A stretch of DNA of 64,000 nucleotides from Dendrobates tinctorius (lineage: Eukaryota): positions 31,124,001 through 31,188,000 of the forward strand of contig NW_027361784.1 in NCBI RefSeq assembly GCF_039654945.1, in the 5' to 3' direction. Of this stretch, positions 14,434 through 59,661 are shown piece by piece. How positions within the stretch are numbered: the stretch's first letter is position 1; every line of letters starts with the position of its first letter. The notes beneath the pieces were generated by a model, which saw nothing but the letters and a program-made list of their open reading frames with translations, searched no databases and had not been told where the DNA came from. The position numbers were made by a program, and so were the translations under genes.

Positions 14434-15474
14434 TGTGGTGCCCCCAGGAGTATGGTCTCCACAATGGCATTGCCTTCCTCCTAGGGAGTGTGATGTCATG
14501 CTTGGAAGCAATAAAGGATCTCTCTGGCAGTTAATCACAACACACAACACAGCTCCTGCTTTAGGCCAGCAGAGGGAGCTGTGAACCCAAAACTGGGGGA
14601 AGAGCGATTCTCTGGGGGCCAGGAAGGGAAAATTAGGAGTTCGTGTGAGGAGGGCAACGTGTGTGGACGTGAGAAGAAGAGATGCGGGATTGAGCAGAGT
14701 TCAGGCTCATTCCCAGCTATAGCGCATGATCTGGAGCCTGGTCTCCAAGGCTGTATGGACACTGATGGTCCTGCAACAGAAACCGGAGGAATAGGAAGCT
14801 GTAAATGCTCTATTCCCACATAAGACTCGGAGGCACAACAGCGACGTGTGAGCCAGAAGAGGAAGGCTACAGATGTCTGCCATACGAGGGAGTTCTAAAG
14901 AGAATAAGCAAGTGGAACTTCAGTGTAACACAGTACTGCAAGTCCTTAAAGATAAGCGCTAGGAAGGAGACTGCACTACCCATCTGCATATAGAGATTCC
15001 TAAGTTGCTTCCAGGCTAGCCAGCTCCTGTGCCATCTGTAATCTGGACCCTGGACTGCATTTGCCAAGCAAAGTAAAGGTAAAGAAACTGCACCCTGTTG
15101 TGTCATTGCCTTCTTCCTGCAACCTCTCCAGCACTGCTGCATCTCTGTGCCAGACACTACACCCTCTTCCTCAACACCTTCCCTCTCCATCTACACTGCC
15201 CTGGGACTACAGCCCTGCCTGTGGAGGGCTACAACATCATTGCTGCACCACACCATCTGTCCCAGAGGATCTGTCTGCAGCGTTGGCTTAACACCTTAAT
15301 TGCCGAACACCACAGGTGGCGTCACGAATCATTCACTCATAAACTTTATTCCCAACTCAACCCCTTTTACATGGGCGCCCAGGGCCACGGACCGGGTCAC
15401 CGCTGCTGTGACACCTCCCTCTGAGAGACTGGCACGGTACCGAGTACCCCACAGCCCTGGGAGGGCGACCCACA
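14434..15474 (+). mobile_element. Solo LTR (Gypsy-type), same family as 23145-24073
   Basis: TGTGG...CCACA termini and clear similarity along its length to 23145-24073. No TSD recognised. Confidence 0.7.
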
Positions 15475-22845: not shown

Positions 22846-23144
22846 TAAAAACTGGACACTTTTGATCTTGTGACAAGTCCACTTTAAGCAATGGTTAGTT
22901 AAGGTGATAAGCAATTATCCTATGATCCATGTGAGGGGCTCTGAGCTCTGGGACCCTACTGATCCTCTGCACGCAGAGGCCACAGTACTGTTTTAGTACT
23001 GTATCCTCCTTGTAGCCCATGAGATTGCAGTTGTCCTCAATGGGACCATGTTGAACGCACGTATGTGTAGTCTGGAGTCCCCTATAGCAGCAGTCTGGGT
23101 GTGTAGTCTGGAGCCCCCCTGTAATATGTGTAGTCTGGAGCTAG

Positions 23145-24073
23145 GCTTGGAAGCAGTGAAGGGTCTCTCTCGCAGTTAACCTATACATGCAACACAGTTC
23201 CACTCCAGCCCAGCAGGGGGGACTCTGAACTGAAGGGAGGAGTGCTCGCTGAGGGCCAAGAGGAAGGAGTAGTCAGTTAGTGTGAGGAGGTCCACATGTG
23301 CAGACGTGTAGAGAGAAACTGGAGGTTGAGCTGAGGAAAAGGGAGCTCCCTCCTAGTGAGAGCGCATAAACTGGAGCCTGGTCTCCACCGTTGTACGCAT
23401 ACTAACGGTCCTGCAACAGACACCAGAGGAGTAGGAGGCTGTAAGTGCCCTACCCCCATCTAAGACTCGGAGGCACAACAGCACAGAGTGAGCCAAGAGA
23501 GGAATAGCGGCTACAGCTGTCTGCCATACGAGAAGTGCTAGTAGAAGAGAATTAGGAGGAACTTCAGTGTAACTCAGTACAAGGAGTACTTAATTCAAAT
23601 AAGCGCTAAGAAGGAGACTGCACAGCCCATCTGCTGAGAGAGAATCCTGAGCTGCTTCCAGGCTAGCCTGTTCCGGTACCATCTGTAATCAGGACCCTGG
23701 ACTGCATTTATCAAGTAAAGGTACAGAAATTGCACCCTGCTGTGTCTTTGTCTGCTTCCTACCCTTCCGGCACTGCTACATCCCCATGCCAACCCCATCT
23801 ACACTGCCCTGGGACTACAGCTTCACCTGTGGGGAGCTTTTACATCTTTGCTGCACCATACCATCAGTCCCATTGGATCTGCATGCAGCGTTGGCTTAAC
23901 ACCTCACTTGCCGAACACCACAGGTGGTGTCACAAACTATTCCATTAACTACATTCCGCCATTCAAACTTCCCCTATTACTTGGGCGCGCAGGGCCACGG
24001 ACCGGGTCACCGCTGCTGTGACACATCCCGCTGACACCGGCCCGGTACCGAGTAGCCTGGGAGGGCGACCCAT
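23145..24073 (+). mobile_element. 5'-truncated solo LTR, family of 14434-15474
   Basis: Shared blocks such as taagactcggaggcacaacagc, gcagcgttggcttaacacct and cagggccacggaccgggtcaccgctgctgtgacac. Confidence 0.75.
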
Positions 24074-24126
24074 AGTCCTGGAGCCCCCCTGTAATATGTG
24101 TAGTCTGGAGCCACCTATAACAGCAG

Positions 24127-27100
24127 TGTCATGATCCATGCTGGATCAGGACTGATAAGAGTCACAGGTGTTGCAATCAGTGTTGGTGATAGTGTTTATT
24201 TCAACCATGCTTGGTGGAGGAAGGAGCTGGAGAACGTTCCTTGCAGCACTGTCTTAGCCTGGTGTGGAACGAGTCATAGGGGATTTCCTTGTAGCTCTGA
24301 CAGAGCTTGGTGGCAGCGATTCAGGAGGAGAGCTGCATTTTGGTGGTGGACTCTTGCCAGAAGCAAGTGCAACAGAGTAAAGCTAAGTGGTGTTTCCCTG
24401 TTTGTGTTTTTCCTTAGTGTGTATTAGTACAGCAGTGGGGCCAGTGCCTGCGCCACCCAGCTCCCTAGCAAGGGATAGGTGTAGGGTGTGCTAGGGCGAC
24501 AGGTTCCTGAACGGCGCCCGGTGAGGAACCGGCATAGGGAACATTAGGAGCGTTAGGGACACTGACACAGGGGAGTGCAGGAGGTCTCCACGTCCCCTTT
24601 CCCTATCGCAGGGCCCACTGTTGTAACTGTTTCCCCTTTCCCTGTGTCTTGTTGTTTTAGTTACCGGCCTGTGGGCTGCGTCACACAGAACCGTATCACG
24701 TGCCGCGTCTTGTTGTTTTAGTTACCGGCCTGCGGGTCGCGTCACACAGGACGGGTCATCGTGACATTATCACCAACCTATAGTTTTTTTTCTGCTGAGC
24801 CATGGACCCAGTTCAGCCCTTTGCCCAAATGCTGCAGATCCTTACTAATGAGATTAGGGGGCTGCGCGGAGGGTTGGTGCTGCAGCTGCGGCTGTTGGTG
24901 GGCTTTGGGGGCTTGGTTCAGGAACAGGCTCAGCCAGAACCCAAGATATCCCTCCCTGACAGATTTTCTGGAGGGAGAGATCAATTCTTGGTGTTTCAAT
25001 AAGCCTGTAAATTGTATTTCAGGCTACGCCCTCGTTCATCAGGGAGTGAAGAGCAACGGGTGGGAATCATTATGTCCCTTCTTAAAGGGGATCCCCAATC
25101 CTGGGCCTTCTCCCTACCGGACAATTCTCCATCATTGGTGTCCGTGGACGAGTTTTTTGCGGCCTTGGCGCTTGTGTATGGGGATCCTGATGGCGTCACC
25201 CTGGTGGAATCCCGAATCCGTAGGTGTAAACAGGGAGCACGTGTTGCTGAGGAGTACTGCTCAGAGTTTAGGAGATGGGCCACTAACACTCAGTGGAATG
25301 ACCCTGCACTTAGGAGTCAATTTGTGCAGGGTTTGTCTCCAAAGTTGCAGGATACTCTGGTGCAGTACGCTGCCCCCAGGTCGCTGGAGGCCGCCATGTC
25401 CCTTGCCATCTGGGTGGATAGACGCCTCAGGGAAAGACATATACAAAAAGTGCCCCCTGATGTCTTCGCTAGGGAGGAGGACCCACCAGTGCAGATGGAG
25501 GAACCCAGACAGCCCGGTGTTGTTGATTCAAAAAAGGTGGCGTCTGCTGCTCGTCGTGGTGGGGGGTATGCTTTTCCTGTGGGAAGCCTGGCCATTTTAT
25601 GAGAGCCTGCCTAGTTCATGCCAAGTCTGCAGATGAACCTATGCAAGTAGGAGGAGCTAGTTTGTATTCGGAGCTGCCTACGGTTCGGCGAGTGGTGTCG
25701 GCATGTATGTACTGTGGGCAGACTGGTCATGTCCTGAAAGCTTGCCCATTGCGCGCCAAATTATCTGTGCCATCTGAGGAGCCGCATTCCCCTGTTCACT
25801 TGGAGGGAGGCGACCAGGGAGTATACGTTTCCTCCATTTTGCCCTCCCAAGGTACCATGTCAGCCGAGGTCTTGGCTGGCGGGGTACCGGAGGTGATACC
25901 GGTGCTTGTGGACAGCAGAGCAGGAGTCAGTCTGGTGGATGCTCGCTTTGTCCAGACTCATGGTCTGAGGTGTAGGACGCTAGCCCAACCTATTAGCGTC
26001 CAGGCCATAAACTCGGTTTCACTGAGCCAGGGGAGCTTGACCCAAGTCGTAGAAAAGATCCATCTACATATAGGACATCATGAGGAGTCCTTGTCATGCT
26101 ACGTCTTGGAGGGAATGCCAGTACCTATTGTTTTAGGCCTCCCTTGGCTGAAAAGACACAACCCAGTAATAGATTGGCAGGCGAGGGGAGTGGTCAGCTG
26201 AGGGCAGTCGTGTGAGGGCTGCTGCCTAGGAACTGCTGTCTCTGCCGTCTCTCTTCAACGGACCCCTTCCTCTCCGGTGAGAGCAGCAGATGTGCTGCAG
26301 GAGAGCAGGGGCAAGTCTCAACCCTCGCCATTGGCCAACCCTGGGAGGCGCAGACCTCGTGGTGGAAGTGCGGGGGTGTGATTGTGGTGACACAGGGGGA
26401 TGCCTCTGTTATCAGTCCCAGAAAGAGTTCTCCAAATGGTGACAAACGAGCGAGTGGCAATAAACGTTCAGGTCCGGACCTGTGTGTGAACGAGCGTGTA
26501 TGGGTGGCCACCAAAAAACATCCAGTGGAAATGTGTTGTGGAGTGTTACCAGCTCATACCAAACATACACATACACAACTCGTTCCCCAGGTCAACGCTT
26601 CGGAGATGTGTGGTGCCTCCAGAATCGTTGCCAATACCAGCGGGCTCGTTTGTCATCAACCTGATGTACAGGTAGTTGCTGGGGTGAACTCTCGGTCTGG
26701 GCGTCCCCGCTGTAGGTGGTTCCCTGATGAGGAGCGGTCTTGAGGGTCCAGCGGTCCCTCATTAAGGGGAGGGTACCGTCATGATCCATGCTGGATCAGG
26801 ACTAATAAGAGTCACAGGTGTTGCAATCAGTGTTGGTGATAGTGTTCATTTCAACCATCCTTGGTGGAGGAAGGAGCTGGAGAACGTTCCTTGCAGCACT
26901 GTCTTCGCCTGGTGTGGAACGAGTCATAGGGGATTTCCTTGTAGCTCTGACAGAGCTTGGTGGCAGCGATTCAGGAGGAGAGCTGCATTCTGGTGGTGGA
27001 CTCTTGCCAGGAGCAAGTGCAACAGAGTAAAGCTAAGTGGTGTTTCCCTGTTTGTGTTTTTCCTTAGTGTGTATTAGTACAGCAGTGGGGCCAGTGCCTG

Positions 27101-27355
27101 CGCCACCCAGCTCCCTAGCAAGGGATAGGTGTAGGGTGTGCTAGGGAGACAGGTTCCTGAGCAGCGTCCGGTGCGGAACCGGCATATGGAACGTTAGGAG
27201 AGTTAGGGACACTGACTCAGGGGAGTGCAGGAGGTCTCCATGTCACCTTTCCCTATCGCAGGGCCCACCATTGTAACTGTTTCCCCTTTCCCTGTGTCTT
27301 GATGTTTTAATTACCGGCCTGCGGGCCGCATCACACAGGACGGGTCATCGTGACA
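24127..27355 (+). mobile_element. Non-autonomous Tf1/sushi-type Gypsy LTR element (gag + protease only)
   Basis: LTRs 24127-24766 (640 bp, with a 61-bp tandem duplication) and 26777-27355 (579 bp), roughly 96% identical by eye. TSD AGCAG; PPT aaggggagggtac; no RT, RNase H or integrase core. Confidence 0.92.
24802..26201 (+). pseudogene. Gag-protease pseudogene (sushi/PEG10-like capsid, two CCHC knuckles, aspartic protease)
   Basis: PEPKISLPDRFSG, LLKGDPQSWA, WNDPALRSQF; CFSCGKPGHFMRAC (25569-25610); CMYCGQTGHVLKAC; LVDSRAG; IVLGLPWLKRHNPVIDW. Stop at 25000-25002 and a frameshift near 25565. Confidence 0.88.
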
Positions 27356-27583
27356 AGCAGTCTGGATGTGTAGTCTGGAGCCCCCCTATAATATATGTAG
27401 TCTGGATCCCCCTATAGCAGCAGTCTGGGTGTGTAGTCTGGAGCCCCCCTGTAATATGTGTAGTCTGGAGCCCATTTAACAGCAGTCTGGATGTGTAGTC
27501 TGGAGCCCCCTATAACAGCTGTCTGGATGTGTAGTCTGGAGCCCCCTATAACAGCAGTCTGGGTGTGTAGTCTAGAACCCCCC

Positions 27584-29038
27584 TTTCACGGGGTTACCAC
27601 AACGGAGCAGAGCCAGAAGACAGCAGCATCTGGTTTCTCCTACTCCGGCGCTGAGAAGAAGCACGTCTCCGCCGGTTTATTAAACGTGTTTATTTCTTGC
27701 AGCAGAACAGGGGTTAATTAGCCATGTTGGAAATTCTTGTGTTCAGCTGTGCTCGTGTAAGGAGGAAGACTGGGCTGCGGGTACCTGCATCATGTCGGGT
27801 CCGGAACTGTCAAGGCTGCGTCCAGTGTTGCCGGGGGGAAGAATGGGGAATTGGACAGGTCCCATGTTCCAGGGAGAGCGTGTGTGGCTAAGCCAGGCAG
27901 TGAGCAGGGAGCGTGGGAAAGTCTCCTCAGTTCCGCTCCGGCAGTGAGAGAGGAGGCAGGTGTGCGACGCACTCCGCAGAGAGAGGCAGCGCGGAGCTGT
28001 GCTCCAGCAGAGTCTGCGGGGACGCTCTGGTGAGACAGTGCATGTGCAGAGTGCCGTGCGCCCGGCTAATCAGAGTGCAGAGCTTGCACGGAGGAGTGAG
28101 GGCCAAGTGCAGGACCAGGAGGTGCATCTTCCATTGCTGATGGACGCGCAGTGGCACCCGTGTTAGAAAGAGACTACTGTAGCGCTCCTCACTTCAGCTG
28201 CACAGATTTATGGACTAGGGGCTCAGTGGGCAGAACAGGTGACCGCCCATTGCCACCAGAAGCCAGACCGTGATCTGTTGAGATCCATCTGAAGACCATA
28301 CCGGTTGCTGCTGGTACTACTACCCTCAGTGGACGGCCTGCGGCTGAGGAACCTAGAGACACGATAAGTTTATAACCGGACTGTTGTTACATTGCAATTT
28401 CTGGTCTCAATTTAACTGTTATCTCCCTGCGAAGAGTTCCCTTATTGTTATAATTAAATTGTTTACTGTTAACCCCTGCTCTGCCTCCCCTGCTTCACTG
28501 CATCCTGCAACCTGCTTATACTCGGTTAGCCACTCCTTTTCCCTATATAATCTGGCATCTATTACCTCGTCCTTGTCAGAGTTATCTCTTGCTGCATGGC
28601 AATAGGAGAGAGAGAAGTTGGTATGAGAAGGAGAGCTGGCGGAGCTGGAGGAGTTAGAAGTGACTGTTGCTTGATTTGTAAGTATGGTAATCCCTTATCT
28701 TTCCCTGTTTTGCTTTCTTCCCCTTCCTGCATACCCTGGTGGATTCCTTTGTTATATGTGAGTGAATATTTTGTGTATGTGGAATTTTCTGTTTCCCCTT
28801 GCCTTTGCTGCCCTGTTTGTCGGGTTGGTGTTCTGCAGTGCACAGTAGCATCTTCTCTTCCCTGGGTGGGGGAAAGGGACAGACAGAGGGCTGTACTAGG
28901 AGATAAGGCAAGGGCGGAGGCCCGGTGTCTTCACCATCTAAACTATATCGGGGAACAGGGCGAGCTAGGGTGCCCCCTAGTATTGGGGTCAGGAAAGGCG
29001 CCCCTGGTTCCAGGTCACTCGACAGCTGTGTCGCTGCA
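27584..29038 (+). mobile_element. Decayed solo LTR inserted in the C-run of a minisatellite unit
   Basis: Flanked by CCCCC on both sides (gaacccccc|...|ccccctataac); degenerate termini tttcacg...ctgca; TATAA near 28546. Confidence 0.6.
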
Positions 29039-30464
29039 CCCCCTATAACAGCAGTCTGGTTGTGTAGTCTGGAGCCCCCTATAACAACAGTCTGGTTGTG
29101 TAGTGTGGCGTCCCTCTATAGCAGCAGTCTGGATGTGCATTCTGGAGCCCCCTATACCAGCAGTCTGGATGTGTAGTCTGGAGGCTCCCTATAACAGCAG
29201 TCTGGGTGTGTAGTCTGCAGGCCCCCTATAACAGTAGTCTGGGAGTGTAGTCTGCAGGCCCCCTATAACAGTAGTCTGTGTGTGTAGTCTGGAGGCCCCC
29301 TATAACAGTAGTCTGTGTGTGTAGTCTGGTGCCCCCTATAGTCGCAGTCTGGATGTGCAGTCTGGAGCCCCCTATAGCAGCAGCTGCAAATAGGGTAGCC
29401 CATCCCTGTCCTGTATGTTCTTATATGCCGATCTCCCCTTCTGTTCCTGAGTTTTGCTGACATCCGCACTTCAGATTCTCTTTCCAGTAAAGATTTGGAG
29501 CCTTACATCTACAGCTGAGAGATTCTTGGAAACATTTAGCAATATGAACTAAAATGAGGTCACGAGGTTCCGCTGCTGCTACAACCACAATTAACACGTA
29601 AAGAAGCTAATATGACATTTCTTCAAATTGAAGACTGAGCTAAAATTAGTCATAAAATACATAAATTCTGAAACATTTACAGCAGCATGTCACAAAATGT
29701 AATGAAGTTATCACATTTACCTTCATCAACTTCATTTGTGTCCAGAAGCGAGAAGTGAAAGACACCAGTGGGATGGTGGAATCTGACCTTAGCTTCTAAA
29801 CTGGAGGAGAGCGCCTGTGCTCCCATAGTCTTTGCACCCTGAATATATGTTCTTTTCATCATTTACTCCAATGCTACATTTTGGGTAATATGTTTTCTAG
29901 AAAGAAAAATAAGTTTTTTGCTTTGGCATTCTTGTTGGTTATTTAGAGCGATGGGAGCCGTGAGACCTCTGCTAGAGATTTCTGTCTTGTTGAGTCTGCT
30001 GGGGAACAGTGAGAGTAGGAACATGAACGTGGCTCTGGAGTAATGAGTGATTATAGTCCGCTTTCACAATTTTGTCTATGGGTGACCCTGTCCAGTTAGA
30101 ACATCCTAATCTAAAGATATGCCCTTTTTTCTATGCCCTGTAACTTGTGGATGACCTAACCAACTGGAGTGCTTCGAGACTGCCTATGAAGAGGGTGATT
30201 GGCTTGACACAGCACCAGAAGCTGACCTTTGGGCATAATGAAAGAAAGAGAGCGTTCCTGCATCCAGCTGGGGTCCGGGACCGCTACATTATGGCTGGTG
30301 ACTGGGAGCGAGGAATAGTCAGTGAGCTTTCCACGTTTTTCTACATAGAATTGTAACCACCAAGCAGAGACTGCTCATGTTGTACTACAACCAGCAAGCT
30401 CATTGTCTAGTTTGTGACATGAAATCACCAAGACAAATGCCAATATGTTGCTGTGTGACTATTA

Positions 30465-38400: not shown

Positions 38401-38744
38401 TAGACGGAGAATGGTGGGGGCTTGGATTGCTTTCTGTGCCTGTGTAGGGTTCGAGCAGGCTCACAGGATGCAGTGACGAGACACGAGACTGAATGTGGGG
38501 TGAAATAAACTTTTATAAGTTTTAAAGCCGCAAGGGCTAAAACTGCTTAAATCAGACAAAAGGGGAAACACTTATTTGTCCTCGCAGGGACTCGTAAAAC
38601 AACATTAAAAAAACAAAAAGGGTCCTTATTTTCTCTATAATACACTTAGCCTTCCGGGCGTCGCTCGAGTTCACGACCACTCAGGGGTTGCAGATGTGGC
38701 TGCCTTGTAATCCACGACTTCCCGGAAGGACTTGTGCTTGTCCA

Positions 38745-39097
38745 GCCCCGAAGAGACCAGAACGATGGGGCGCAGCAGGCCCTTAAGAAACTGGACGGTG
38801 GGGCGCAACGGGCCCTGTAGTAACCGGAACGATGGGGCACAACAGGCCCTGAAGAAACCGGAACGATGGGGCACAACAGGCCCTGAAGAAACTGGGCGGT
38901 GGGGCGCAACGGGCCCTGAAGAAATGGGGTCGGTGGGGCACAACGGGCCCTGAAGAAGCTGGCACGGTGGGGCACAACAGGCCCTGAAGAAATGGGGTCG
39001 GTGGGGCACAACGGGCCCTGAAGAAGCTGGCACGGTGGGGCACAACAGGCCCTGAAGAAGTGGGGTCGGTGGGGCACAACGGGCCCTGAAGAAACTG
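38745..39097. repeat. 33-34 bp tandem array inside the 3' LTR (also at 45090-45442 in the 5' LTR)
   Basis: About 10 copies of ggtggggcacaac(a/g)ggccctgaagaa-N8. Confidence 0.92.
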
Positions 39098-39752
39098 TTC
39101 AGGGGGTCAATCTCCCAGGCGTCCGTTTAGAGGCGCTCGTTCCCCAGCCAGGTCATGACGCAGTTTCAAAAAAGACATAAACGTTAACAAATTCTGCTCA
39201 GTGTCCCCTCAGTAACCGGGACGGGCTCTGCGGCCGCCTATAGCGAGGTGACGTCCCCTGAGGTCGGTGATGACGGGGCCGCGGCTGTGGGAGAAGACAG
39301 GGGGGCAGTGTCCTGGCCACTGTACCGGATTGCTGTGTCGTCGCAGCGGTCGCCTGAGATCCCGGTCCTGTCACACCACGGAGGGAATCAGCGGCCGTCA
39401 CTTTATCTGAATCTTTGCGGGGGGAAACTCCCGGGGAGAGTCTCTTACGCGTCAACCTTCGGTAAGTCTCAAATTTCCCTTTTTCAATCTCCTGCCTGTC
39501 TCTCTTTTCCACACCGTCAGTTGCCACAGTCCTCTCTCTGCCGCACGGCTTCCTCTCTCCTGTCAGGCTCTCTGCCAACTGCCACCTCAGCGCGTCCCCT
39601 GCTCCTTTTACCCTCGCCCCGCCCCCTGTTGCCCTGACAACTTCAGTCGCATGTCTCCCTTTGTAATCCCCCTGATGTGGTTTCTTCAACAACCCTGATG
39701 GCGGTCCCCCTGGTTCTAGCCCAATCACTGTATGGGGGTCCTCCTCCCCACA

Positions 39753-39764
39753 TTCTCCCACCCT
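39753..39764 (-). promoter_or_regulatory. Polypurine tract
   Basis: AGGGTGGGAGAA immediately before the 3' LTR on the minus strand. Confidence 0.8.
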
Positions 39765-39798
39765 GTAAGCTCGCCAGTCCTCGGGCGAGGGTGTTAGT

Positions 39799-42700
39799 CT
39801 ATTGAGATTGGACTGTAAAGGTGTTTAATATTTGTTGCCATACGAACTGGTCTTGTTCATACCGTTCGGGGGGTTTGCCGGCTGTTGACCGCTCGGAGCG
39901 TCTAAGTTCGACTGGGGTGGAATCTTCTGGGGTGGTGGACGTCGGTGAGCTGCAAGATGCCGGTGGGTTAATTGTGTCAACTGGCTCATTATTGGGTGGA
40001 GGGCCCTTGGGAACTGGAGGGAAATCCTCGTCGTCTGAGTTCCAGCATATGGACTCCGGTTCGGATGTCTTCGGGACGGGTTCCAGTTGCTTCGGGTCGG
40101 AAGAAATACACAGGCGTAACATATTACGATGCACAATGCGAGTGGGCAGTGTTTCATCCTGCTCGGGCTGTATTTCATACACAGGTCCTTCTGAATGGAT
40201 ACGGCGTAGTACCCGATAAGGACTCTCTTCCCAACGTGACTCCAGTTTATTCTGGGGGCGTTGATCTAGTACAAGCACACGGTCCCCGCTTTGGAGATGG
40301 GGAGGGGAGGTTGTATTCTTCCCGGGGTGTTCCCAGTCTTGAAGTTTGGTATGTACAATTCGGTGAAGAGTTTGCAACCTGTGGCGATGATTTCGGACCC
40401 AAGACGACACTCCGGTCCAGGGCCGAGGCTCTTCGGGGTCCAACTCTACCTCCGTGATCCCTTTACCCTCTCGTCCGAACAGCAGGAAATAAGGAGTATA
40501 GCCCGTTACTCGATGTACCCGATTATTATAAACCCACACTAATTCAGAAACATATTCAGGCCAACGAGCTTTCTTGTCACTCTCCAGAGTGCGTAGCATT
40601 TGAATCAATGTCCGATTAAATCGCTCACAAGCCCCATTCCCTTGCGGGTGATATGGTGTGGTCCGGGATTTATCAATCCCATAAAGATGATGTAGTTCCT
40701 CCATAACTTTCCACAAAAAACATGCTCCCTGGTCGGAATGTATGCGTTGAGGACAGCCGTACACTTGTATAAAATTTCTGCAAATTACGGAGGCGGCTGA
40801 CTCCGCGGTCTGGTCTCGAGTAGGGGTGACCACAGCGAATTTAGTGAAATGATCCACCATGACGAGGCAGTGTTCGTATCCCTGGAATGCGGGACCAATG
40901 TGCAGATAATCCACCGTCAAGAGCTCCAAGGGTTCTGAAGTCACAATCGTCTGTGTTGCGGCCCTCTGAGCAGGCGGTTTGGCCAATTCACATAAGCGGC
41001 AAGTACGACAAACTTCGTCCACAACAGTCGACAAGCGTGGGTGATAAACTTTCTGTTGTAACCATTGCAAAGTCTTTTTGACTCCAAAGTGGGCCCCTTT
41101 TTCGTGAGCCTCTCGAGCCAGTTCGTGTAGTTGAGCTCCGGGCGTAACCACCTGCCAAACAGTCGTTGAGGTTGTTTGCGAAGTGATCTTACGGTACAGT
41201 AATCCACTTCGGATAATCAGTCTCTCCCATTGTCGCAGCATCAGCGACAGGTCTTGGGTCAAAGCTTGTCGTTGAGTGTCAGTGGGTAATTGACCAGCAG
41301 CGACCCATTTCCGGAGAAGTCCAACTTCTTCATCTTCTTGTTGCTGTTGTATCCACTTATTACGAGATTGTTCCAGGATGCCCCTGTGGGCCTCTGGGGA
41401 AGATACTTTTGCATCAACATTGGTGAGCACGGCAGCGGTAAGAGCGAACGGTATTTCCTCTCCTTCTAATTCTTCGTCTCGATTCTGTCCAGGAGTTGTA
41501 TGTCGAATCCTAGAGAGAGCATCTGCATGAACATTCTCGGCCCCTCTTTTGTAAATAATCTTGTAATTGTACTTTGCCATTCGGGCCACCCATCGCTGCT
41601 CCAAAGCCCCCAACTTGGCGTTTTCCAAATGAGCCAGTGGGTTATTGTCAGTTCGCACTACCACCTCGGAGCCCGCTAGGTACTCTGCGAATCTCTCCGT
41701 CATAGCCCACACCACTGCGAGGAGCTCGAGCTTAAAAGAGCTGTAATTGTCAGGGTTACGCTCGGAGTCATGGAGTGAACGGCTTCCATATGCGATCACC
41801 CTTTCCCGGCCATCCTGAACTTGTGACAACACAGCTCCTAGCCCGTGAAGACTCCCGTCAGTGTGCAGGATGAACGGCTGAGAAAAATCCGCATAAGCCA
41901 ACACTGGGGCATCCGAGAGTGCAGCCTTGAGATCTCGGAAGGCCTCTTCCTGAGGGTGTTGCCACTGGATTTTTCGCCCATTGGCCCCAGCGGGAGCCCC
42001 CTTCAGCAGGTCATGTAGGGCTCGAGCTCGACATGCAAAATTCTTTACGAAACGACGGTAATATCCAGCTAACCCCAGAAAAGCCCGCACGTCTTTCACC
42101 GTCTCGGGGGTAGGCCATTCCTGGATAGCAGCAATCTTCTCCCGGGATGGCCTCACACCTTCTGCCGAAACGACATGACCCAGATACTCAATCTGAGAGC
42201 GAAATAGGTGACATTTCTGAGGCTTCACCTTCAACCCGTACTTTTGCAGCCGGCTGAGTACCTGTCCCAACCGCTTCAGGTGGTCCTCGAAGGAGGCGGC
42301 ATAGACGATGATGTCGTCCAGGTAGATCAACGTGGCCTCAAAATTGAGATCCCCTAGACATCGCTCCATCAATCGCTGAAATGTCCCGGGGGCGTTGGCC
42401 AGCCCGAATGGCATTCGATTAAACTCAAACAGTCCCATGGGCACTATGAACGCCGTCTTAGCTCTGTCCTCTTCTGACATAGGCACCTGCCAGTACCCAC
42501 TGGCCAAGTCCAGGGTCGAAAAATATGTTGCTTTACCCAATGCAGACAGAGATTCTTCTATGCGGGGCAGTGGGTATGAGTCTTTAATAGTGCAAGCATT
42601 CAATTTACGATAATCCACACAGAATCGTAGTGTACCATCTTTCTTCCGAACCAACACGATGGGGGCCGCCCAAGGGCTTTGACTTTCCCGTATCACCCCT

Positions 42701-43929
42701 TTTTGTAGCATCTGAGCCAGCAAAGTTTTCACCTCCTGATAGAGTTGTGGCGGGATCTGTCGATATCGTTCTCGGATAGGGGCCGCTCCTGCTGTGGGGA
42801 TCTCATGAGTGATGGCGGTGGTACACCCAAAGTCGTCCTCATGACTAGCAAATACTTCATGGTACTGTCCCAGCAATGCTTTTACTTGTGAAAGTTGGGC
42901 CGCAGTTAGTCCAGAAAGCTCGGCCCGCATCTGCTCCAAAATATTTCGGCCCTTCTCTTGTGTCGAGACTTCGTGGGCCTGTAGGGTTCGTATTGTTTCC
43001 TCCCCGGGATCCTCGGGGTGTACTCGTAATTGAACCGCAGCAGCGGGCAGCACTTCTTCTAGAGGCTTTACTAGTTTGGCCAGTACAGTCCGTGCTTTCA
43101 GAATGATATCTCGGTCTTCAAGGTTAACGCAGCGGACCAGGGCGGTTCCTTTTCGCACCGTAGCGAGGGAACGGGCCACCAGTATGCCAGGAGGTAAGTG
43201 CTCTGAGTGACACGGCTCCACCTGCACCTCTACGCCTTCCAAAGGTATCGGGGCCCGAATTGGCAGGGCCACCACTGTCTGTCCAGGAGGCAGCACAAGC
43301 AGGGGTGCCGCTGTCGCGATGACCTTGCCCAGAGCCTCACCCTCCTGGCAGTCCCGATGCACCCGCGCACCTCGCACCAGCTGCTGGAATACCTGTCCCT
43401 GAGCTGTGCGAGAACCCCACTGCTTCAGTGTCCTTTGTGTGGGATCATTAAGCAACAGGTTACCAAACTCTTTTAAAATATTCATGCCTAGGGTGACGGG
43501 GTGTCGTTGATCAGCTTCTCCTTGAGTCAGCACCACCCCTCTGCGGCCGAGGGGTTTACCGCACAACGTCACCTGCACCCACACTACCCCGGCAACCGGA
43601 ACCGGCAGTTGGTTGGCGGCTACTAGTCTAATCATGGGCCCCCACTGAGGCCTTGCTGCCTCCGGAAAGTTTTGTTGAAAGTACGCTGCGGGCATAGTGG
43701 TTACTTGTGACCCCGTGTCCACCAGACACCGGACGGCCCGGCCCTCTACTTCTGCCCAAACTTCAGGACACTTTGCTACCAAATCTTCGGGACTTCCACC
43801 ACCCCTAGTTGTGGTTTTCGGCTCCGAGCGGCGTCCCCCCAGCCCGGAGCCCTTTAGTTTAATGGCCGCCGGGGTGGGTATCTCCCACGCCGCGGACACT
43901 CTCGGGCGAAGTGGCCTGGTTCTCCACAC
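39799..43929 (-). CDS. pol: Gypsy Pol polyprotein (protease, RT, RNase H, integrase), probably expressed by -1 frameshift from gag
   Basis: Uninterrupted 1376-codon ORF: LVDTGS, LRFCVDYRKLN, MPFGL, YLDD, TDGS/ELLA/TDNNPL, H..H..CRTC, VDHFTK/SDQG/ERFNRTL. Confidence 0.96.
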   Translation of the reverse strand: MWRTRPLRPRVSAAWEIPTPAAIKLKGSGLGGRRSEPKTTTRGGGSPEDLVAKCPEVWAEVEGRAVRCLVDTGSQVTTMPAAYFQQNFPEAARPQWGPMIRLVAANQLPVPVAGVVWVQVTLCGKPLGRRGVVLTQGEADQRHPVTLGMNILKEFGNLLLNDPTQRTLKQWGSRTAQGQVFQQLVRGARVHRDCQEGEALGKVIATAAPLLVLPPGQTVVALPIRAPIPLEGVEVQVEPCHSEHLPPGILVARSLATVRKGTALVRCVNLEDRDIILKARTVLAKLVKPLEEVLPAAAVQLRVHPEDPGEETIRTLQAHEVSTQEKGRNILEQMRAELSGLTAAQLSQVKALLGQYHEVFASHEDDFGCTTAITHEIPTAGAAPIRERYRQIPPQLYQEVKTLLAQMLQKGVIRESQSPWAAPIVLVRKKDGTLRFCVDYRKLNACTIKDSYPLPRIEESLSALGKATYFSTLDLASGYWQVPMSEEDRAKTAFIVPMGLFEFNRMPFGLANAPGTFQRLMERCLGDLNFEATLIYLDDIIVYAASFEDHLKRLGQVLSRLQKYGLKVKPQKCHLFRSQIEYLGHVVSAEGVRPSREKIAAIQEWPTPETVKDVRAFLGLAGYYRRFVKNFACRARALHDLLKGAPAGANGRKIQWQHPQEEAFRDLKAALSDAPVLAYADFSQPFILHTDGSLHGLGAVLSQVQDGRERVIAYGSRSLHDSERNPDNYSSFKLELLAVVWAMTERFAEYLAGSEVVVRTDNNPLAHLENAKLGALEQRWVARMAKYNYKIIYKRGAENVHADALSRIRHTTPGQNRDEELEGEEIPFALTAAVLTNVDAKVSSPEAHRGILEQSRNKWIQQQQEDEEVGLLRKWVAAGQLPTDTQRQALTQDLSLMLRQWERLIIRSGLLYRKITSQTTSTTVWQVVTPGAQLHELAREAHEKGAHFGVKKTLQWLQQKVYHPRLSTVVDEVCRTCRLCELAKPPAQRAATQTIVTSEPLELLTVDYLHIGPAFQGYEHCLVMVDHFTKFAVVTPTRDQTAESAASVICRNFIQVYGCPQRIHSDQGACFLWKVMEELHHLYGIDKSRTTPYHPQGNGACERFNRTLIQMLRTLESDKKARWPEYVSELVWVYNNRVHRVTGYTPYFLLFGREGKGITEVELDPEEPRPWTGVSSWVRNHRHRLQTLHRIVHTKLQDWEHPGKNTTSPPHLQSGDRVLVLDQRPQNKLESRWEESPYRVLRRIHSEGPVYEIQPEQDETLPTRIVHRNMLRLCISSDPKQLEPVPKTSEPESICWNSDDEDFPPVPKGPPPNNEPVDTINPPASCSSPTSTTPEDSTPVELRRSERSTAGKPPERYEQDQFVWQQILNTFTVQSQ

Positions 43930-44768
43930 TCATAACACCGGGCCGGTAGAGATTGACCACCTCGCGGAGAGCGTGACCCCCAGGGACCGGGATTAGCACT
44001 GGGTCGTCCAGTCTCCGGTTCGGTTCTTCTCTTTACTTCAGCCATCTCGCTCTTTATATTTTTCAATTCACGCTTCATCTCCTCCACCCATTGAGGTTCC
44101 TCAACTGTGTTCGAGGAGGCCTCCACACCTCGGACCTTCCCCACGGGGACCGCCATCCCCTGCTCTTGCTCCTGAACCCGTGCCTGACTTCCCACTTCTG
44201 AAAAGTCGATTTGGGGATTCATTCTGATCCGTTCCCTTAAAGCCTGCTTTATCAGTGGATCTCGCAGTCCAGTCACCAGTAGGTCACGTAGGGTTATGTC
44301 AACAGGTCCTACCCCTACCCCATCTTTTCTTTCAATAGCCGTATGCAACTCTTGGAGTACATTCATATACTGAGTAATCGTCTCCCCCTCTGCCTGCATC
44401 CGGCTAAACAGTCGGGTCCTTAACTCTCCCACATTAGTGGGATCCCCGTGGGTCTGTTCCACTATCTGCAACACCTTTTCAAAAGTGTTGCGGTGCCCCG
44501 GGGGTTTCAACATCACTGACCTCCGCACCTCCCCGTCTAGGGCCATGAGTGCCACTTCAGCTTCCAGGTCAGGGGTCATTGGGTGCATCCGAAAAAGCCC
44601 CCTCATCCTCTCTGTCCAGCTCCATAGCATAGTATTTGAGCCAGAGAATCTAGGCAGGTTGTTCAACATGGCCCCCAATGAGATGCTGGTACGGGGACCC
44701 TCATTATTTACAGAGCTTACAGCTCCCCCATGTTCGGGGCTACCACTGTCCGCGCTCGGAGACTGCAT
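43854..44768 (-). CDS. gag: Gypsy Gag (capsid plus CCHC zinc knuckle)
   Basis: 304-aa ORF with Q.EGETI..Y and CYECGEPGHFAREC; overlaps pol, which is in the -1 frame. Confidence 0.93.
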   Translation of the reverse strand: MQSPSADSGSPEHGGAVSSVNNEGPRTSISLGAMLNNLPRFSGSNTMLWSWTERMRGLFRMHPMTPDLEAEVALMALDGEVRRSVMLKPPGHRNTFEKVLQIVEQTHGDPTNVGELRTRLFSRMQAEGETITQYMNVLQELHTAIERKDGVGVGPVDITLRDLLVTGLRDPLIKQALRERIRMNPQIDFSEVGSQARVQEQEQGMAVPVGKVRGVEASSNTVEEPQWVEEMKRELKNIKSEMAEVKRRTEPETGRPSANPGPWGSRSPRGGQSLPARCYECGEPGHFARECPRRGRYPPRRPLN

Positions 44769-44784
44769 CCTGCCGACTACGCCA
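44767..44784 (-). promoter_or_regulatory. Primer binding site, tRNA-Ser
   Basis: TGGCGTAGTCGGCAGGAT, 2 nt after the 5' LTR, is complementary to the vertebrate tRNA-Ser(AGA/TGA) 3' end ATCCTGCCGACTACGCCA. Confidence 0.9.
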
Positions 44785-47669
44785 AGTGTAGGGTTCGAGC
44801 AGGCTCACAGGATGCAGTGACGAGACACGAGACTGAATGTGGGGTGAAATAAACTTTTATAAGTTTTAAAGCCGCAAGGGCTAAAACTGCTTAAATCAGA
44901 CAAAAGGGGAAACACTTATTTGTCCTCGCAGGGACTCGTAAAACAACATTAAAAAAAACAAAAAGGGTCCTTATTTTCTCTATAATACACTTAGCCTTCC
45001 GGGCGTCGCTCGAGTTCACGACCACTCAGGGGTTGCAGATGTGGCTGCCTTGTAATCCACGACTTCCCGGAAGGACTTGTGCTTGTCCAGCCCCGAAGAG
45101 ACCAGAACGATGGGGCGCAGCAGGCCCTTAAGAAACTGGACGGTGGGGCGCAACGGGCCCTGTAGTAACCGGAACGATGGGGCACAACAGGCCCTGAAGA
45201 AACCGGAACGATGGGGCACAACAGGCCCTGAAGAAACTGGGCGGTGGGGCGCAACGGGCCCTGAAGAAATGGGGTCGGTGGGGCACAACGGGCCCTGAAG
45301 AAGCTGGCACGGTGGGGCACAACAGGCCCTGAAGAAATGGGGTCGGTGGGGCACAACGGGCCCTGAAGAAGCTGGCACGGTGGGGCACAACAGGCCCTGA
45401 AGAAGTGGGGTCGGTGGGGCACAACGGGCCCTGAAGAAACTGTTCAGGGGGTCAATCTCCCAGGCGTCCGTTTAGAGGCGCTCGTTCCCCAGCCAGGTCA
45501 TGACGCAGTTTCAAAAAAGACATAAACGTTAACAAATTCTGCTCAGTGTCCCCTCAGTAACCGGGACGGGCTCTGCGGCCGCCTATAGCGAGGTGACGTC
45601 CCCTGAGGTCGGTGATGACGGGGCCGCGGCTGTGGGAGAAGACAGGGGGGCAGTGTCCTGGCCACTGTACCGGATTGCTGTGTCGTCGCAGCGGTCGCCT
45701 GAGATCCCGGTCCTGTCACACCACGGAGGGAATCAGCGGCCGTCACTTTATCTGAATCTTTGCGGGGGGAAACTCCCGGGGAGAGTCTCTTACGCGTCAA
45801 CCTTCGGTAAGTCTCAAATTTCCCTTTTTCAATCTCCTGCCTGTCTCTCTTTTCCACACCGTCAGTTGCCACAGTCCTCTCTCTGCCGCACGGCTTCCTC
45901 TCTCCTGTCAGGCTCTCTGCCAACTGCCACCTCAGCGCGTCCCCTGCTCCTTTTACCCTCGCCCCGCCCCCTGTTGCCCTGACAACTTCAGTCGCATGTC
46001 TCCCTTTGTAATCCCCCTGATGTGGTTTCTTCAACAACCCTGATGGCGGTCCCCCTGGTTCTAGCCCAATCACTGTATGGGGGTCCTCCTCCCCACACCT
46101 GTAGGCCTCTTTCAGGTTGATGGCTCTTACCCATGGGCTTCACAAAATTGCTCCAAATGATTCACTGTGCAGCGTCTTCGTAGACCTCGCCAATCACAAT
46201 TCAGCCAGATACAGTTAATGTTGGGACTAGCCCACAGTGGAAGGGGTTAGTGTTTTGGAAAGTGACAAAGATCCTGTTAGTTTTTCAGATAGGTTTGGGA
46301 GTGAAAAGTGAGCACAGCTGCATGAATGGGTGACTCTAAGTGAAAAGAGACTAAGGACAAGGGATAGCGTGATCCTAAAGAAAAGTTACAAACGAAACAG
46401 GGTGAATGTCCATAGAAGGGTTCTTTGATAGGATGCCGAGTCACGATCACCAGAGCTTGTAACACATAAGGTAACGAACCTAAGCAGGACTGAGTACAAT
46501 GGACTAGTGATGGTCCTGAGTGCAATGGCTCCAGGGTGCCTGTTGTGGAACAAATAGGATGAGGAACCGCTGAGCAAGTAAGGAGCCGTGCTGATCAGGA
46601 CTGTAGCGTTAAACCTGGGTGGTGGTGGAGTAGAGCGAAACAGTGTGCCTCACTAGCCCTGGAGTAAACTACAGAGGAAGGATACTGTGTCGAAAATGTT
46701 TCATACTGTAAAGGAAACGTTTATAAGGCTTTGTACCCGCTATCCCTTGTATATAGCACAAGTTACCGTTTGGTAAAGAGTTTATGTTTGGTGGTCTCCC
46801 TCTCTGAACTGTACAACATCTGGTCCCGGCACACCCACAACGCCAGTTCATGCAGCTTGCAGGAGCGTAATGCCCTCACAGCACAAGTCCACACACCCAA
46901 GTAGGACCCACAATTTCATGTAGTGCACCGGGGCGTAAAAGGAGACCGGTGACTCTCCGCTTTTACCGACCTGCACTACACTATCTCAGCTCACATTTCT
47001 CTTCAGTTCCAGATCCATTTTTGCAACAGAGCGGTTGCCCCGCTTCTCCACTTAGCATACCTTGCAGTGTCTCCTGTTCACTATGGATTGGCTATGGGGA
47101 TGACTCATGGACCACCATTATTTACGTGACGTGGAGCTTAGTATGCAGGACATGCGGCAAAGCAGCAGAGTGTATGCAAGGAGATGCAAAATGAGTTGGA
47201 AGAGGGTGTGAAGCCATGGGCATACCTAGAATGGGAACGTATGTGGCAGTGGCACTCGAGGCAGCTATAAAGATAAGACTATGGGTGACCGAACACACAA
47301 TATGATACTGGTAGGCTTGGACAGATATGAGAACCTGCAGAAAGATTCGGCATATCTATTTTCAGATTGCCGGTTCTTTTGTTCTTAGTGAGATAAGTCG
47401 CCAACATTGAAGAACACTGAAGTGATTGGCAGCGTGAGCGCTCCTGCGTAAGGAGGAGTCAGGAGAAACGTCTGTCGTCTGAAACATCCTTTGGGCGACA
47501 GGTAAGTTGGCAATTGGCAAATATGGCTTAAGGGCGAAAATTTTTTTAAAGAACATGGAAAACATAACGTGCAGATCGGGAGAATAATTCCATAATATTT
47601 CATACTGCATACATGATAGATGTCTCTGTAAATTTCTCATAGATGAAATGTGAAGATGTATTGTTTATA

Positions 47670-49882: not shown

Positions 49883-51232
49883 TCTACTCTGTCCTCCTTC
49901 TCCTAGACCCATCGTCTGCCTTCGACACCGTAGACCATTCCCTCCTGCTACAGACTCTCTCATCTCTTGGCATCACAGACTTGGCCCTATCCTGGATCTC
50001 ATCATACCTAACACACCGAACATTTAGTGTCTCCCTCTCACACACCACCTCCTAACCTCGCCCCCTGTCTGTTGGTGTTCCTCAAGGCTCTGTCCTAGGA
50101 CCCCTACTATTCTCCATCTACACTTTTGGCTTGGGACAGCTCATAGAATCCTACGGTTTGCAGTATCACCTCTATGCCGATGACACGCAGATCTACCTAT
50201 CTGGACCCAACCTCGCCTCCTTACTGACTGAAATCCCACTATCTCAGCCTTCTTCTCTGCTCGCTTTCTCAAACTGAACATGGACAAGACAGAATTCATC
50301 ATCTTTCCCCCATCCCCATCTCACTCTACCCCTCCACCAGACCTATCCATCAGCGTCAATGGCTGCTTTCTTTCCCCAGTCCTGCACGCTCGGTGCTTTG
50401 GGGTGATCCTCGACTCTGCGCTCTCTTTCAAACCACATATCCATGCCCTCGCCTCCTCCTGCCACTTCAAACTCAAAAATATTTCCCGGATCCGCTCATT
50501 CCTCAACCACGAAACCACAAAAACACTAGTGCATGCTCTTATCATCTCCTGCCTCGACTACTACAACCTCCTACTCTTTGGCCTCCCCTCTAGCACTCTG
50601 GCTCCGCTCCAGTCCATCCTACACTCCGCTGCCCGACTAATCAACCTGTCTCCCCGCTATTCCCCAGCCTCCCCCCTATGCCAGGCCCTTCACTGGCTTC
50701 CTATTGCCCAGAGGCTCCAATTCAAAACCCTAACCATGAAATACAAAGCCATCCACAACCTGTCTCCTCCATACATCTGTGACATGGTCTCTAGGTACCT
50801 ACCTGCACGCAACCTTTGATCATCTCAAGGTCTCCTTCTCTACTCCCCCCTTATCTCTTCTTCCCAAAAACGAATACAAGACTTCTCCCGTGCTTCCCCC
50901 ATACTCTGGAACTCTCTGGCGCAACACATCAGACTCTCACCATCAACGGAAACCTTCAAGAAGAACCTGAAGACCCACCTGTTCTGACAAGCCTACAGCC
51001 TGCAATGATCCTCGGTCTACTGAACCACCGCACGACCTGCTCTACCCTCTCCTACTGTATCCTCACCCATCCCTGTAGACTGTGAGCCCTCGCGGGCAGG
51101 GTCCCCTCTCCTTATGTACTTGTGTGTCCCTTGTCTTACACATGTTTATTATACTTGTCTATATTTCCCCTTTTCACATGTAAAGCGCCATGGAATAAAT
51201 GGTGCTATATAAATGCATAATAATAATAATAA
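49883..51232 (+). mobile_element. 5'-truncated L2 LINE (RT C-terminal half, 3' UTR, (TAA)n tail)
   Basis: [44 protein letters not shown]; ends tgtaaagcgccatggaataaatggtgctatataaatgca(taa)n. Confidence 0.94.
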
Positions 51233-59359: not shown

Positions 59360-59659
59360 GTGTAAGTGTGCGTGCGTAGCCCATTCACTATCTCCATCCA
59401 TCCTTCACTCCTGCAAGATGGCTGGACCTTCATTGTAAATACACCATTGTAAATACACACCTGTACTCTGTATCTCCCTCACCTCATTGTAGATTGCACG
59501 CTCTCACGAGCAGGGTCGTCTTATTTCGTCTTATTTTGCTTTAATTATTGTATTGTTAGCGTTGTTACTTATGACTTGTGTTTTGAAACTGTTAAACTGT
59601 AAAGCGCTGCGGAATATGTTGGCGCTATATAAATAAAGATTATTATTATTATTATTATT
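59355..59659 (+). mobile_element. L2-type 3' tail or L2-dependent SINE inserted in the protease region
   Basis: Ends tgtaaagcgctgcggaatatgttggcgctatataaataaag(att)n; flanked by ATCAAG at 59349-59354 and 59660-59665. Confidence 0.9.
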
Positions 59660-59661
59660 AT

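What the first reader, a model, noticed from the sequence alone, without database searches (positions are those of the whole stretch)
24154..24777. A second element shows the same self-priming pairing with different, compensatory sequence
Seen: TATCACCAAC (24768-24777) pairs perfectly with GTTGGTGATA (24182-24191), again extending to 11 bp with G-U (24192/24767) and again about 28 nt after a TATA-like box (gataag; aataag in the 3' LTR). Relative to the chromovirus (GCGGGTGATT / AATCACCCGC), three positions differ on both strands while pairing is kept. This is covariation evidence from within one window. The implied U3 is only about 55 nt, which is unusually short.
Basis: partly seen in the sequence, partly recalled or inferred. 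Interest (0 to 1): 0.7.

Follow-up and report, generated by a model that had tools for sequence, protein, structure and literature searches.

The report
Self-priming signal in a frog retrotransposon
A decayed, internally deleted sushi-type LTR retrotransposon has, right after its 5' LTR, a 10-base site that pairs perfectly with the predicted first bases of its own transcript; this is the known tRNA-independent "self-priming" signal of the Tf1/sushi group, so the finding is real but ordinary.

Summary
TATCACCAAC (24768-24777) is the exact reverse complement of GTTGGTGATA (24182-24191). That site starts 28 nt after a weak TATA-like box and 55 nt into the 5' LTR.

The element (24127-27356, 5-bp target duplication AGCAG) keeps gag, a zinc knuckle and protease. 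It has lost RT, RNase H and most of the integrase. Its gag is 45% identical to that of the chromovirus at 57385-63481 and 68% identical to a full-length chromodomain element (L002).

I collected eight more related frog and metagenome elements. In all ten, a 9-11-nt perfect duplex joins a site 1-2 nt after the LTR end to one LTR site preceded by T. In the seven where I measured it, an A/T-rich box lies 28-31 nt upstream. Almost every family has different letters. In swap controls, cognate pairs reach 9-11 bp and non-cognate pairs never reach 10. Four alignable Ranitomeya LTRs show three compensatory double changes.

The G-U eleventh pair is not conserved. The 55-nt U3 is the shortest of ten (55-223 nt).

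This is the self-priming already described for Tf1/sushi elements, vertebrates included. The transcript start could not be tested, because only contigs were available. The scan had already noted the same signature on another piece of this genome.

The parts
24122..24126 (.). 5' target-site duplication AGCAG
   Evidence: The same 5 nt follow the 3' LTR at 27357-27361. Joining the flanks restores the 37-nt satellite unit.
24127..24766 (+). 5' LTR, 640 nt, running TGTCATG...CGTGACA. It carries a 61-nt tandem duplication (24647-24707 and 24708-24766) that the 3' LTR lacks.
   Evidence: The alignment with the 3' LTR is 95.7% identical over 561 nt. The termini fit the Sushi-clade motifs TGTYANR / CNTNACA (PMC3601003).
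24154..24159 (+). Weak TATA-like box GATAAG (AATAAG in the 3' LTR), 28 nt before the primer
   Evidence: The box sits in the same register as TATAAG in the chromovirus and in L001.
24182..24195 (+). Predicted transcript start and self-primer. The core is GTTGGTGATA (24182-24191). It is followed by G24192 (G-U pair) and TGT, which pairs with the LTR end.
   Evidence: T at -1 and G at +1 appear in all seven elements compared.
24767..24777 (+). Spacer T24767 followed by the 10-nt primer-binding site TATCACCAAC
   Evidence: It is the perfect complement of 24182-24191. It has no TGG start.
24802..25602 (+). gag, broken into two frames (24802-25002 and 25012-25602)
   Evidence: Pfam Retrotrans_gag at 5.6e-11. 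It is 45% identical to the chromovirus gag and 62-68% identical to the L002 gag.
25599..26324 (+). CCHC zinc knuckle, aspartic protease and the first residues of pol
   Evidence: Pfam zf-CCHC and RVP_2. tblastn with the L002 protease and the chromovirus pol N-terminus.
26325..26443 (+). Region holding the internal deletion junction. RT, RNase H and the integrase core are missing.
   Evidence: The L002 RT-RNase H ORF gives no match. Only integrase C-terminal pieces match, at 26444-26515 and 26550-26639.
26764..26773 (+). Polypurine tract AAGGGGAGGG, followed by TAC and then the LTR
   Evidence: The same order (purine run, TAC, TGT) occurs in the chromovirus, L001, L002, L006 and L010.
26777..27356 (+). 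3' LTR, 580 nt, with an identical copy of the primer at 26832-26841
27357..27361 (.). 3' target-site duplication AGCAG

Best explanation
The region is the 5' LTR and leader of a dead, non-autonomous Tf1/sushi-type (vertebrate V-clade) Ty3/gypsy chromovirus. The pairing is its tRNA-independent self-priming signal.

Shown by sequence:
- It is an LTR element with a target duplication.
- A 10-nt site lies one base after the LTR end and is perfectly complementary to an LTR site 28 nt downstream of a TATA-like box.
- The same architecture, with compensating letters, occurs in ten related elements.
- This copy lacks RT, RNase H and the integrase core.

Inferred from the Tf1 experiments of Levin and of Lin and Levin (as cited in PMC4600332 and bioRxiv 10.1101/2022.12.06.519325):
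- Transcription starts at G24182.
- The RNA 5' end folds back about 585 nt onto the site after the LTR.
- The RNase H domain of RT cuts the RNA after about 10-11 nt and frees a 3'-OH.
- RT extends this primer through U5 and R, and the product jumps to the 3' R.
- Plus-strand synthesis starts at the polypurine tract (26764-26773).
- Plus-strand strong-stop synthesis copies the RNA primer and so rewrites the binding site. This step would itself keep the primer and its site matched as they drift.
- The 1-2-nt spacer after CA would be trimmed by integrase.

This copy would have needed all enzymes in trans from a full-length relative such as L002.
For: - Pairing and its position. It is rare in shuffles (48 of 5000), and the full-leader minimum-energy fold closes on it.
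- Group membership: gag is 45% identical to the chromodomain-bearing element in the window and 68% identical to L002, which encodes RT, RNase H, integrase, SH3_Tf2-1 and Chromo. The LTR termini fit the Sushi-clade motif.
- Family test: seven elements show 69 of 70 Watson-Crick pairs, and only 1 of 5040 permutations reaches that total.
- Swap control on ten elements: cognate pairs reach 9-11 bp, non-cognate pairs average 6.6 bp, and none reaches 10 bp.
- Four alignable Ranitomeya LTRs (80-93% identical) show three compensatory double substitutions in columns fixed by the flanking homology.
- An A/T-rich box lies at -31 to -23 in all seven elements tested. Combining the per-element background fractions by Fisher's method, by hand, gives about 2.5e-4. 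T at -1 and G at +1 occur in all seven.
- Contrast: the element at 38443-46097 has a TGG-starting, tRNA-type site.
- Literature: self-priming is described as a common feature of Tf1/sushi elements, vertebrates included.
Against: - The transcript start is not measured. The runs found hold only short contigs, and none is on record as RNA.
- The TATA-like box of this element is the weakest of the set (GATAAG or AATAAG; background fraction 0.17).
- The primer sites in the relatives were found by searching for complementarity, so the 69 of 70 figure is partly by construction. The swap control, the alignment-anchored columns and the box position are the independent parts.
- In three of seven elements the unconstrained fold prefers other local pairings.
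- The three-duplex "pretzel" of Tf1 is only partly recognisable here.
Confidence: 0.85

Rival explanations
1. Self-complementarity is used, but not as in Tf1. The transcript starts upstream of 24182, so the 10-mer is internal. The primer would then be freed by two cuts, or the hairpin would act without the 5' end being the primer end.
For: No transcript-start data could be obtained. The box in this element is a poor TATA. In L014b and L015 the complementarity runs 1-2 nt further upstream, so the exact start is ambiguous there.
Against: An A/T-rich box lies at a fixed 28-31 nt, and T(-1)/G(+1) occurs in all seven elements tested. In most elements complementarity stops exactly at that G.
Confidence: 0.07
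2. The long-range helix serves another purpose in the RNA, such as packaging, dimerisation or control of gag translation. Reverse transcription would be primed by some other RNA.
For: The helix closes the whole leader just upstream of the gag start codon at 24802. Priming itself was not observed.
Against: The 3' strand always begins 1-2 nt after the CA end of the LTR, which is exactly where the primer must sit for the LTR end to be made. No alternative tRNA-type site follows the LTR. Related elements have unrelated sequences there, so a shared host primer cannot explain them.
Confidence: 0.06
3. The complementarity is chance.
For: For this element alone the shuffle frequency is about 1%. The same 10-mer also occurs once by chance in the window, at 62224.
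Against: The same arrangement recurs in ten elements with different letters, and non-cognate pairs never reach 10 bp.
Confidence: 0.02

Closest known systems
Tf1 and Tf2 of Schizosaccharomyces pombe (and Tj1, Tosmo, Tcry1): experimentally shown self-primed reverse transcription
   Same: The binding site after the 5' LTR is complementary to the start of R rather than to a tRNA. The element is a chromovirus of the Tf1/sushi group. A TATA box lies upstream of the primer. Sequence just downstream of the primer pairs with the end of U5, which resembles one arm of the Tf1 "pretzel".
   Different: Tf1 uses 11 nt, and its site appears to abut the LTR: the first five bases of the Tf1 site match the flank directly after the LTR (PMC11042837). 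The frog elements share a 10-nt duplex after a 1-2-nt spacer. The full three-duplex structure is not demonstrated here. Cleavage and priming are not tested. This copy has no RT or RNase H of its own.
Vertebrate Tf1/sushi or V-clade chromoviruses (sushi-ichi of Takifugu; Amn-ichi, Amn-ni and Amn-san, the last from Xenopus tropicalis); Butler et al. 2001 J Mol Evol 52:260, as cited
   Same: The host range fits: fish, amphibians and reptiles, with frogs carrying hundreds of Amn-san copies (PMC4131045). The gag, protease and chromodomain-integrase architecture is present in the relatives. The LTR termini are Sushi-type. Self-priming has been inferred from sequence for these elements.
   Different: This copy is an internally deleted, frameshifted derivative. 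Its U3 is the shortest seen here (55 nt). I could not read Butler et al. directly, so I cannot say whether this frog family or its primer sequence was listed there.

Membership tests
Tf1/sushi (V-clade) chromovirus, Ty3/gypsy | LTR retrotransposon with TG...CA LTRs and a short target-site duplication | tested here: met
   LTRs at 24127-24766 and 26777-27356, running TGTCA...TGACA, with target duplication AGCAG.
Tf1/sushi (V-clade) chromovirus, Ty3/gypsy | Sushi-clade LTR end motifs TGTYANR / CNTNACA (PMC3601003) | tested here: met
   TGTCATG at the start and CGTGACA at the end.
Tf1/sushi (V-clade) chromovirus, Ty3/gypsy | gag and protease homologous to members of the group | tested here: met
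   gag is 45% identical (E = 4e-57) to the chromovirus in the window and 68% identical to the L002 gag. Pfam gives Retrotrans_gag, zf-CCHC and RVP_2.
Tf1/sushi (V-clade) chromovirus, Ty3/gypsy | Integrase with a C-terminal chromodomain, and RT placement in the Tf1/sushi clade | tested here: not met
   This copy has lost RT, RNase H, the integrase core and any recognisable chromodomain. The features are present in its nearest full-length relative L002 (SH3_Tf2-1 and Chromo) and in the chromovirus at 57385-63481. Membership therefore rests on gag, protease and the LTRs. No tree was built.
Tf1-type self-priming | The site after the 5' LTR is not complementary to a tRNA 3' end | tested here: met
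   The site reads TTATCACCAAC and has no TGG start. Related elements have unrelated sequences there. The control element at 38443-46097 has a TGG-starting site. The window holds no tRNA gene for a direct comparison.
Tf1-type self-priming | The site is complementary to a sequence inside the 5' LTR, and complementarity is kept by compensating changes between relatives | tested here: met
Tf1-type self-priming | The complementary LTR sequence is the very 5' end of the mRNA | not testable with these tools
   Only Logan contigs were available, and none is recorded as RNA. The indirect support is the A/T-rich box at -28 to -31 and T(-1)/G(+1) in all seven elements.
Tf1-type self-priming | 11-nt primer and the three-duplex "pretzel" structure | tested here: inconclusive
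   The conserved duplex is 10 nt (9-11). The eleventh pair is G-U here, U-G in the chromovirus and a mismatch in five others. A second duplex, TGT with ACA at the LTR end, is seen in this element, the chromovirus and L001. No third duplex was established.
Tf1-type self-priming | RNase H cut of the RNA duplex creates the primer | not testable with these tools
   This is a biochemical step. This copy encodes no RNase H.

The most novel reading that the evidence does not exclude
Frog V-clade chromoviruses may use a variant of Tf1 self-priming: a 10-nt primer and a 1-2-nt spacer that integrase trims. The primer and its site would diversify fast because plus-strand synthesis rewrites the site from the primer. 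Nearly every sublineage carries its own primer letters: nine different sequences occur in ten elements, and three compensated changes occur among LTRs that are 80-93% identical. Because the signal lies wholly in cis, enzyme-less derivatives such as this gag-protease-only copy could still be copied in trans.
Probability: 0.3. Interest if true: 0.35.

Novelty: new member of a known kind. Interest (0 to 1): 0.2.

Why it matters
The finding adds a clean, statistically controlled set of vertebrate examples to a priming mechanism that has been shown experimentally only in fission-yeast elements. It gives a simple rule for annotating transcript starts and U3/R borders in frog chromovirus LTRs: an A/T-rich box, then 28-31 nt, then T|G and a 10-mer complementary to the bases 1-2 nt after the LTR. 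It also shows that a non-autonomous derivative keeps the signal. It does not change what is known about how these elements replicate.

Tried and rejected
- RNA evidence for the transcript start: the run search returned 15 small runs kept only as contigs, none recorded as RNA. Laying four of them showed many diverged copies of the family in two organisms but no ends or strand information.
- Direct nucleotide comparison of this LTR with the chromovirus LTR and with the L002 LTR gave no alignable similarity. Covariation between families therefore cannot be anchored by alignment. It was anchored only within the Ranitomeya lineage.
- The apparent 9-nt complement next to the LTR at 39753-39761 is not a primer site. 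That element lies on the minus strand, and the motif is its polypurine tract.
- The repeat pair 50486-51160 / 56712-57385 is not an LTR pair of the chromovirus. It is a repeated unit that the chromovirus interrupted.
- Rfam and tRNA scans of the window found nothing.
- L004, L007 and L013 carry only the site after the LTR (TTATCACCGGC, TAATAGCCGGC and GTACAAACCAGC). Their contigs end before the expected primer, so they could not be scored.
- The original Tf1 papers (PMC230564, PMC109269) are not held.
- I did not run the count of structure pairs, because it would have required a very long typed dot string.

Full report
**What is there**

Positions 24127-27356 hold an LTR retrotransposon on the + strand.
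- The two LTRs are 24127-24766 and 26777-27356. They are 95.7% identical over 561 aligned bases.
- They begin TGTCATG and end CGTGACA, which fits the end motifs published for the Sushi LTR clade (TGTYANR / CNTNACA; PMC3601003).
- The element is flanked by the 5-bp duplication AGCAG (24122-24126 and 27357-27361).
- It sits inside a 37-nt satellite whose unit is restored when the element is removed.
- The 5' LTR carries a 61-nt tandem duplication at its 3' end (24647-24707 and 24708-24766). The 3' LTR lacks it, and other copies of the family in public runs skip it.

**The internal part**

- gag is split by a frameshift into 24802-25002 and 25012-25602.
- A CCHC knuckle and an aspartic protease follow, running to about 26324.
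- RT, RNase H and the integrase core are absent. With the proteins of the full-length relative L002 as queries, gag and protease match. The RT-RNase H ORF gives nothing. Only two short integrase C-terminal pieces match, at 26444-26515 and 26550-26639.
- The copy is therefore non-autonomous and decayed.

**Relationship to other elements**

- Its gag is 45% identical (E = 4e-57) to that of the intact-looking chromovirus at 57385-63481. That element carries RT, RNase H, integrase, the Tf2-1-type SH3 domain and a chromodomain.
- Its gag is 68% identical to that of L002, a collapsed-LTR metagenome contig with the same full domain set.
- The nearest named proteins come from the frogs Ranitomeya imitator and Engystomops pustulosus. 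The window is therefore most likely anuran.

**The observation**

- GTTGGTGATA lies at 24182-24191 and, identically, at 26832-26841 in the 3' LTR. Its reverse complement lies at 24768-24777, one base after the LTR end.
- G24192 faces T24767. TGT at 24193-24195 pairs with the terminal ACA of the LTR, so the helix is 14 contiguous pairs.
- An unconstrained fold of the 629-nt RNA from 24182 to 24810 closes on this helix.
- A perfect helix of 10 bp or more between the 15 nt after the LTR and any LTR position arose in 48 of 5000 dinucleotide shuffles.
- GATAAG (AATAAG in the 3' LTR) starts 28 nt before G24182. TATAAG starts exactly 28 nt before G57547 in the chromovirus, whose pair GCGGGTGATT / AATCACCCGC I also confirmed.

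**Family test**

Using gag relatives I fetched DNA for eight further elements:
- L001 from Engystomops;
- L002, L010 and L012 from metagenome or Logan contigs;
- L006, L014a, L014b and L015 from Ranitomeya.

In every one of the ten elements, a perfect 9-11-nt duplex joins a site beginning 1-2 nt after the ...ACA end of the LTR to a single site inside the LTR.
- The primer letters differ between families: GTTGGTGATA, GCGGGTGATT, GCTGGCTATT, GCCAGATATA, GCTCCTTGT, GCCAGATCGT, GCTGCCAGAT, GGCTTCCTGT and GGCTTCCAGT.
- For the seven elements scored first, 69 of 70 positions are Watson-Crick pairs. Nine of the ten columns show 2-3 pair types. Only the true assignment, out of 5040 permutations, reaches that total.
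- Those sites were found by looking for complementarity, so I ran a swap control with the same search. Cognate LTRs gave 9-11 bp. Non-cognate LTRs gave a mean of 6.6 bp and never 10 bp. The nine non-cognate values of 9 bp are partly between related families.
- The four Ranitomeya LTRs are alignable (80-93% identity). In columns fixed by their flanks, the core reads GCTCCTTGT, GCTTCCTGT or GCTTCCAGT, against ACAAGGAGC, ACAGGAAGC or ACTGGAAGC. That is three compensated double changes.

Two features that were not used in the search also agree.
- An A/T-rich box lies at -31 to -23 in all seven elements tested. Combining the per-element background fractions by Fisher's method, by hand, gives about 2.5e-4.
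- T at -1 and G at +1 occur in all seven.

- The eleventh pair is G-U here and U-G in the chromovirus, but a mismatch in five other elements. The conserved design is a 10-nt duplex after a 1-2-nt spacer. A spacer of that length is what integrase would trim beyond CA, as in retroviruses (my own knowledge).
- The 55-nt U3 is real and is the shortest of ten. The series runs 55, 79, 94, 134, 134, 142, 162, 182, 194 and 223 nt. The published Sushi LTR profile also places its A/T-rich promoter box near match positions 51-57.

**Mechanism**

The arrangement matches the self-primed reverse transcription shown for Tf1.
- In Tf1 the first bases of the mRNA fold back on the site after the 5' LTR, and RNase H cuts the duplex to make the primer.
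- Reviews and later papers call this a common feature of Tf1/sushi elements from fungi to vertebrates. They cite Levin 1995 and 1996, Lin and Levin 1997 and Butler et al. 2001 (PMC6317226, PMC4600332 and bioRxiv 10.1101/2022.12.06.519325).
- In that scheme plus-strand strong-stop synthesis copies the primer. This gives a direct way for the site to follow changes in the primer (inference).
- The polypurine tract AAGGGGAGGG, then TAC, then the LTR is shared across the relatives.
- As a contrast, the young element at 38443-46097 on the minus strand has a TGG-starting site. It reads like the complement of a tRNA-Ser 3' end (the tRNA identity is from memory).

**Not shown**

- The transcript start is not measured. 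The only runs holding this DNA are short contigs, not recorded as RNA.
- The RNase H cut, the third helix of the Tf1 "pretzel", and any past mobilisation of this deleted copy in trans are not shown.
- In three of seven relatives the unconstrained fold prefers other pairings.

**Verdict**

This is a new member of a known kind. The scan had already noted the same signature on another piece of this genome (s1-369579), with the same conclusion, and on the chromovirus of this window (s1-377021).

The one functional test that would need an active element is referred.

Noticed in passing
window 38443-46097 (minus strand): A young LTR element. Its LTRs are 1312 nt and 99.9% identical, the target duplication is CCTG, and long gag (304 aa) and pol (1376 aa) ORFs are present without a chromodomain. 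Its primer-binding site starts with TGG and reads like the complement of a tRNA-Ser 3' end (tRNA identity from memory). I used it as the tRNA-primed contrast.
   Followed up: partly
window 50486-51160, 56712-57385 and 63482 onward: A repeated unit of at least 675 nt occurs twice, 6.2 kb apart (95% identity). The chromovirus at 57385-63481 is inserted into the second copy, with target duplication CTTGTC or a shorter part of it. The nature of the unit is unknown.
   Followed up: no
window 14500-15446 and 23145-24054: An old direct-repeat pair (76% identity, 8.6 kb apart) ends about 70 nt upstream of the element studied. It may be the LTRs of an ancient element.
   Followed up: no
window 23062-24126, 27357-27605 and 29001-29395: Arrays of a satellite of about 37 nt (unit like CAGCAGTCTGGATGTGTAGTCTGGAGCCCCCTATAA) surround the element, which is inserted in one unit.
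   Followed up: no
window 24647-24766: A 61-nt tandem duplication lies at the U5 end of the 5' LTR only. Contigs of other family copies in public runs skip about 70 nt here.
   Followed up: partly
window 24378-24387 and 57599-57608: The two otherwise unalignable LTRs share TAAAGCTAAG followed by a G/T-rich run, at +197 and +53 nt from the predicted starts. This may be a polyadenylation region that marks the R/U5 border. It was not found in the other relatives.
   Followed up: partly
window 62224-62233 and 40644-40652: The primer-like strings GTTGGTGATA and GCGGGTGAT recur inside integrase SH3 coding sequence (...GGTGATATGGTGTGG). This is compatible with chance (expected 0.14 per window).
   Followed up: no
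L001:10614-16671 (Engystomops pustulosus): The related element there has a 3-kb internal tandem duplication covering gag and part of pol (99% identity) between its LTRs.
   Followed up: no
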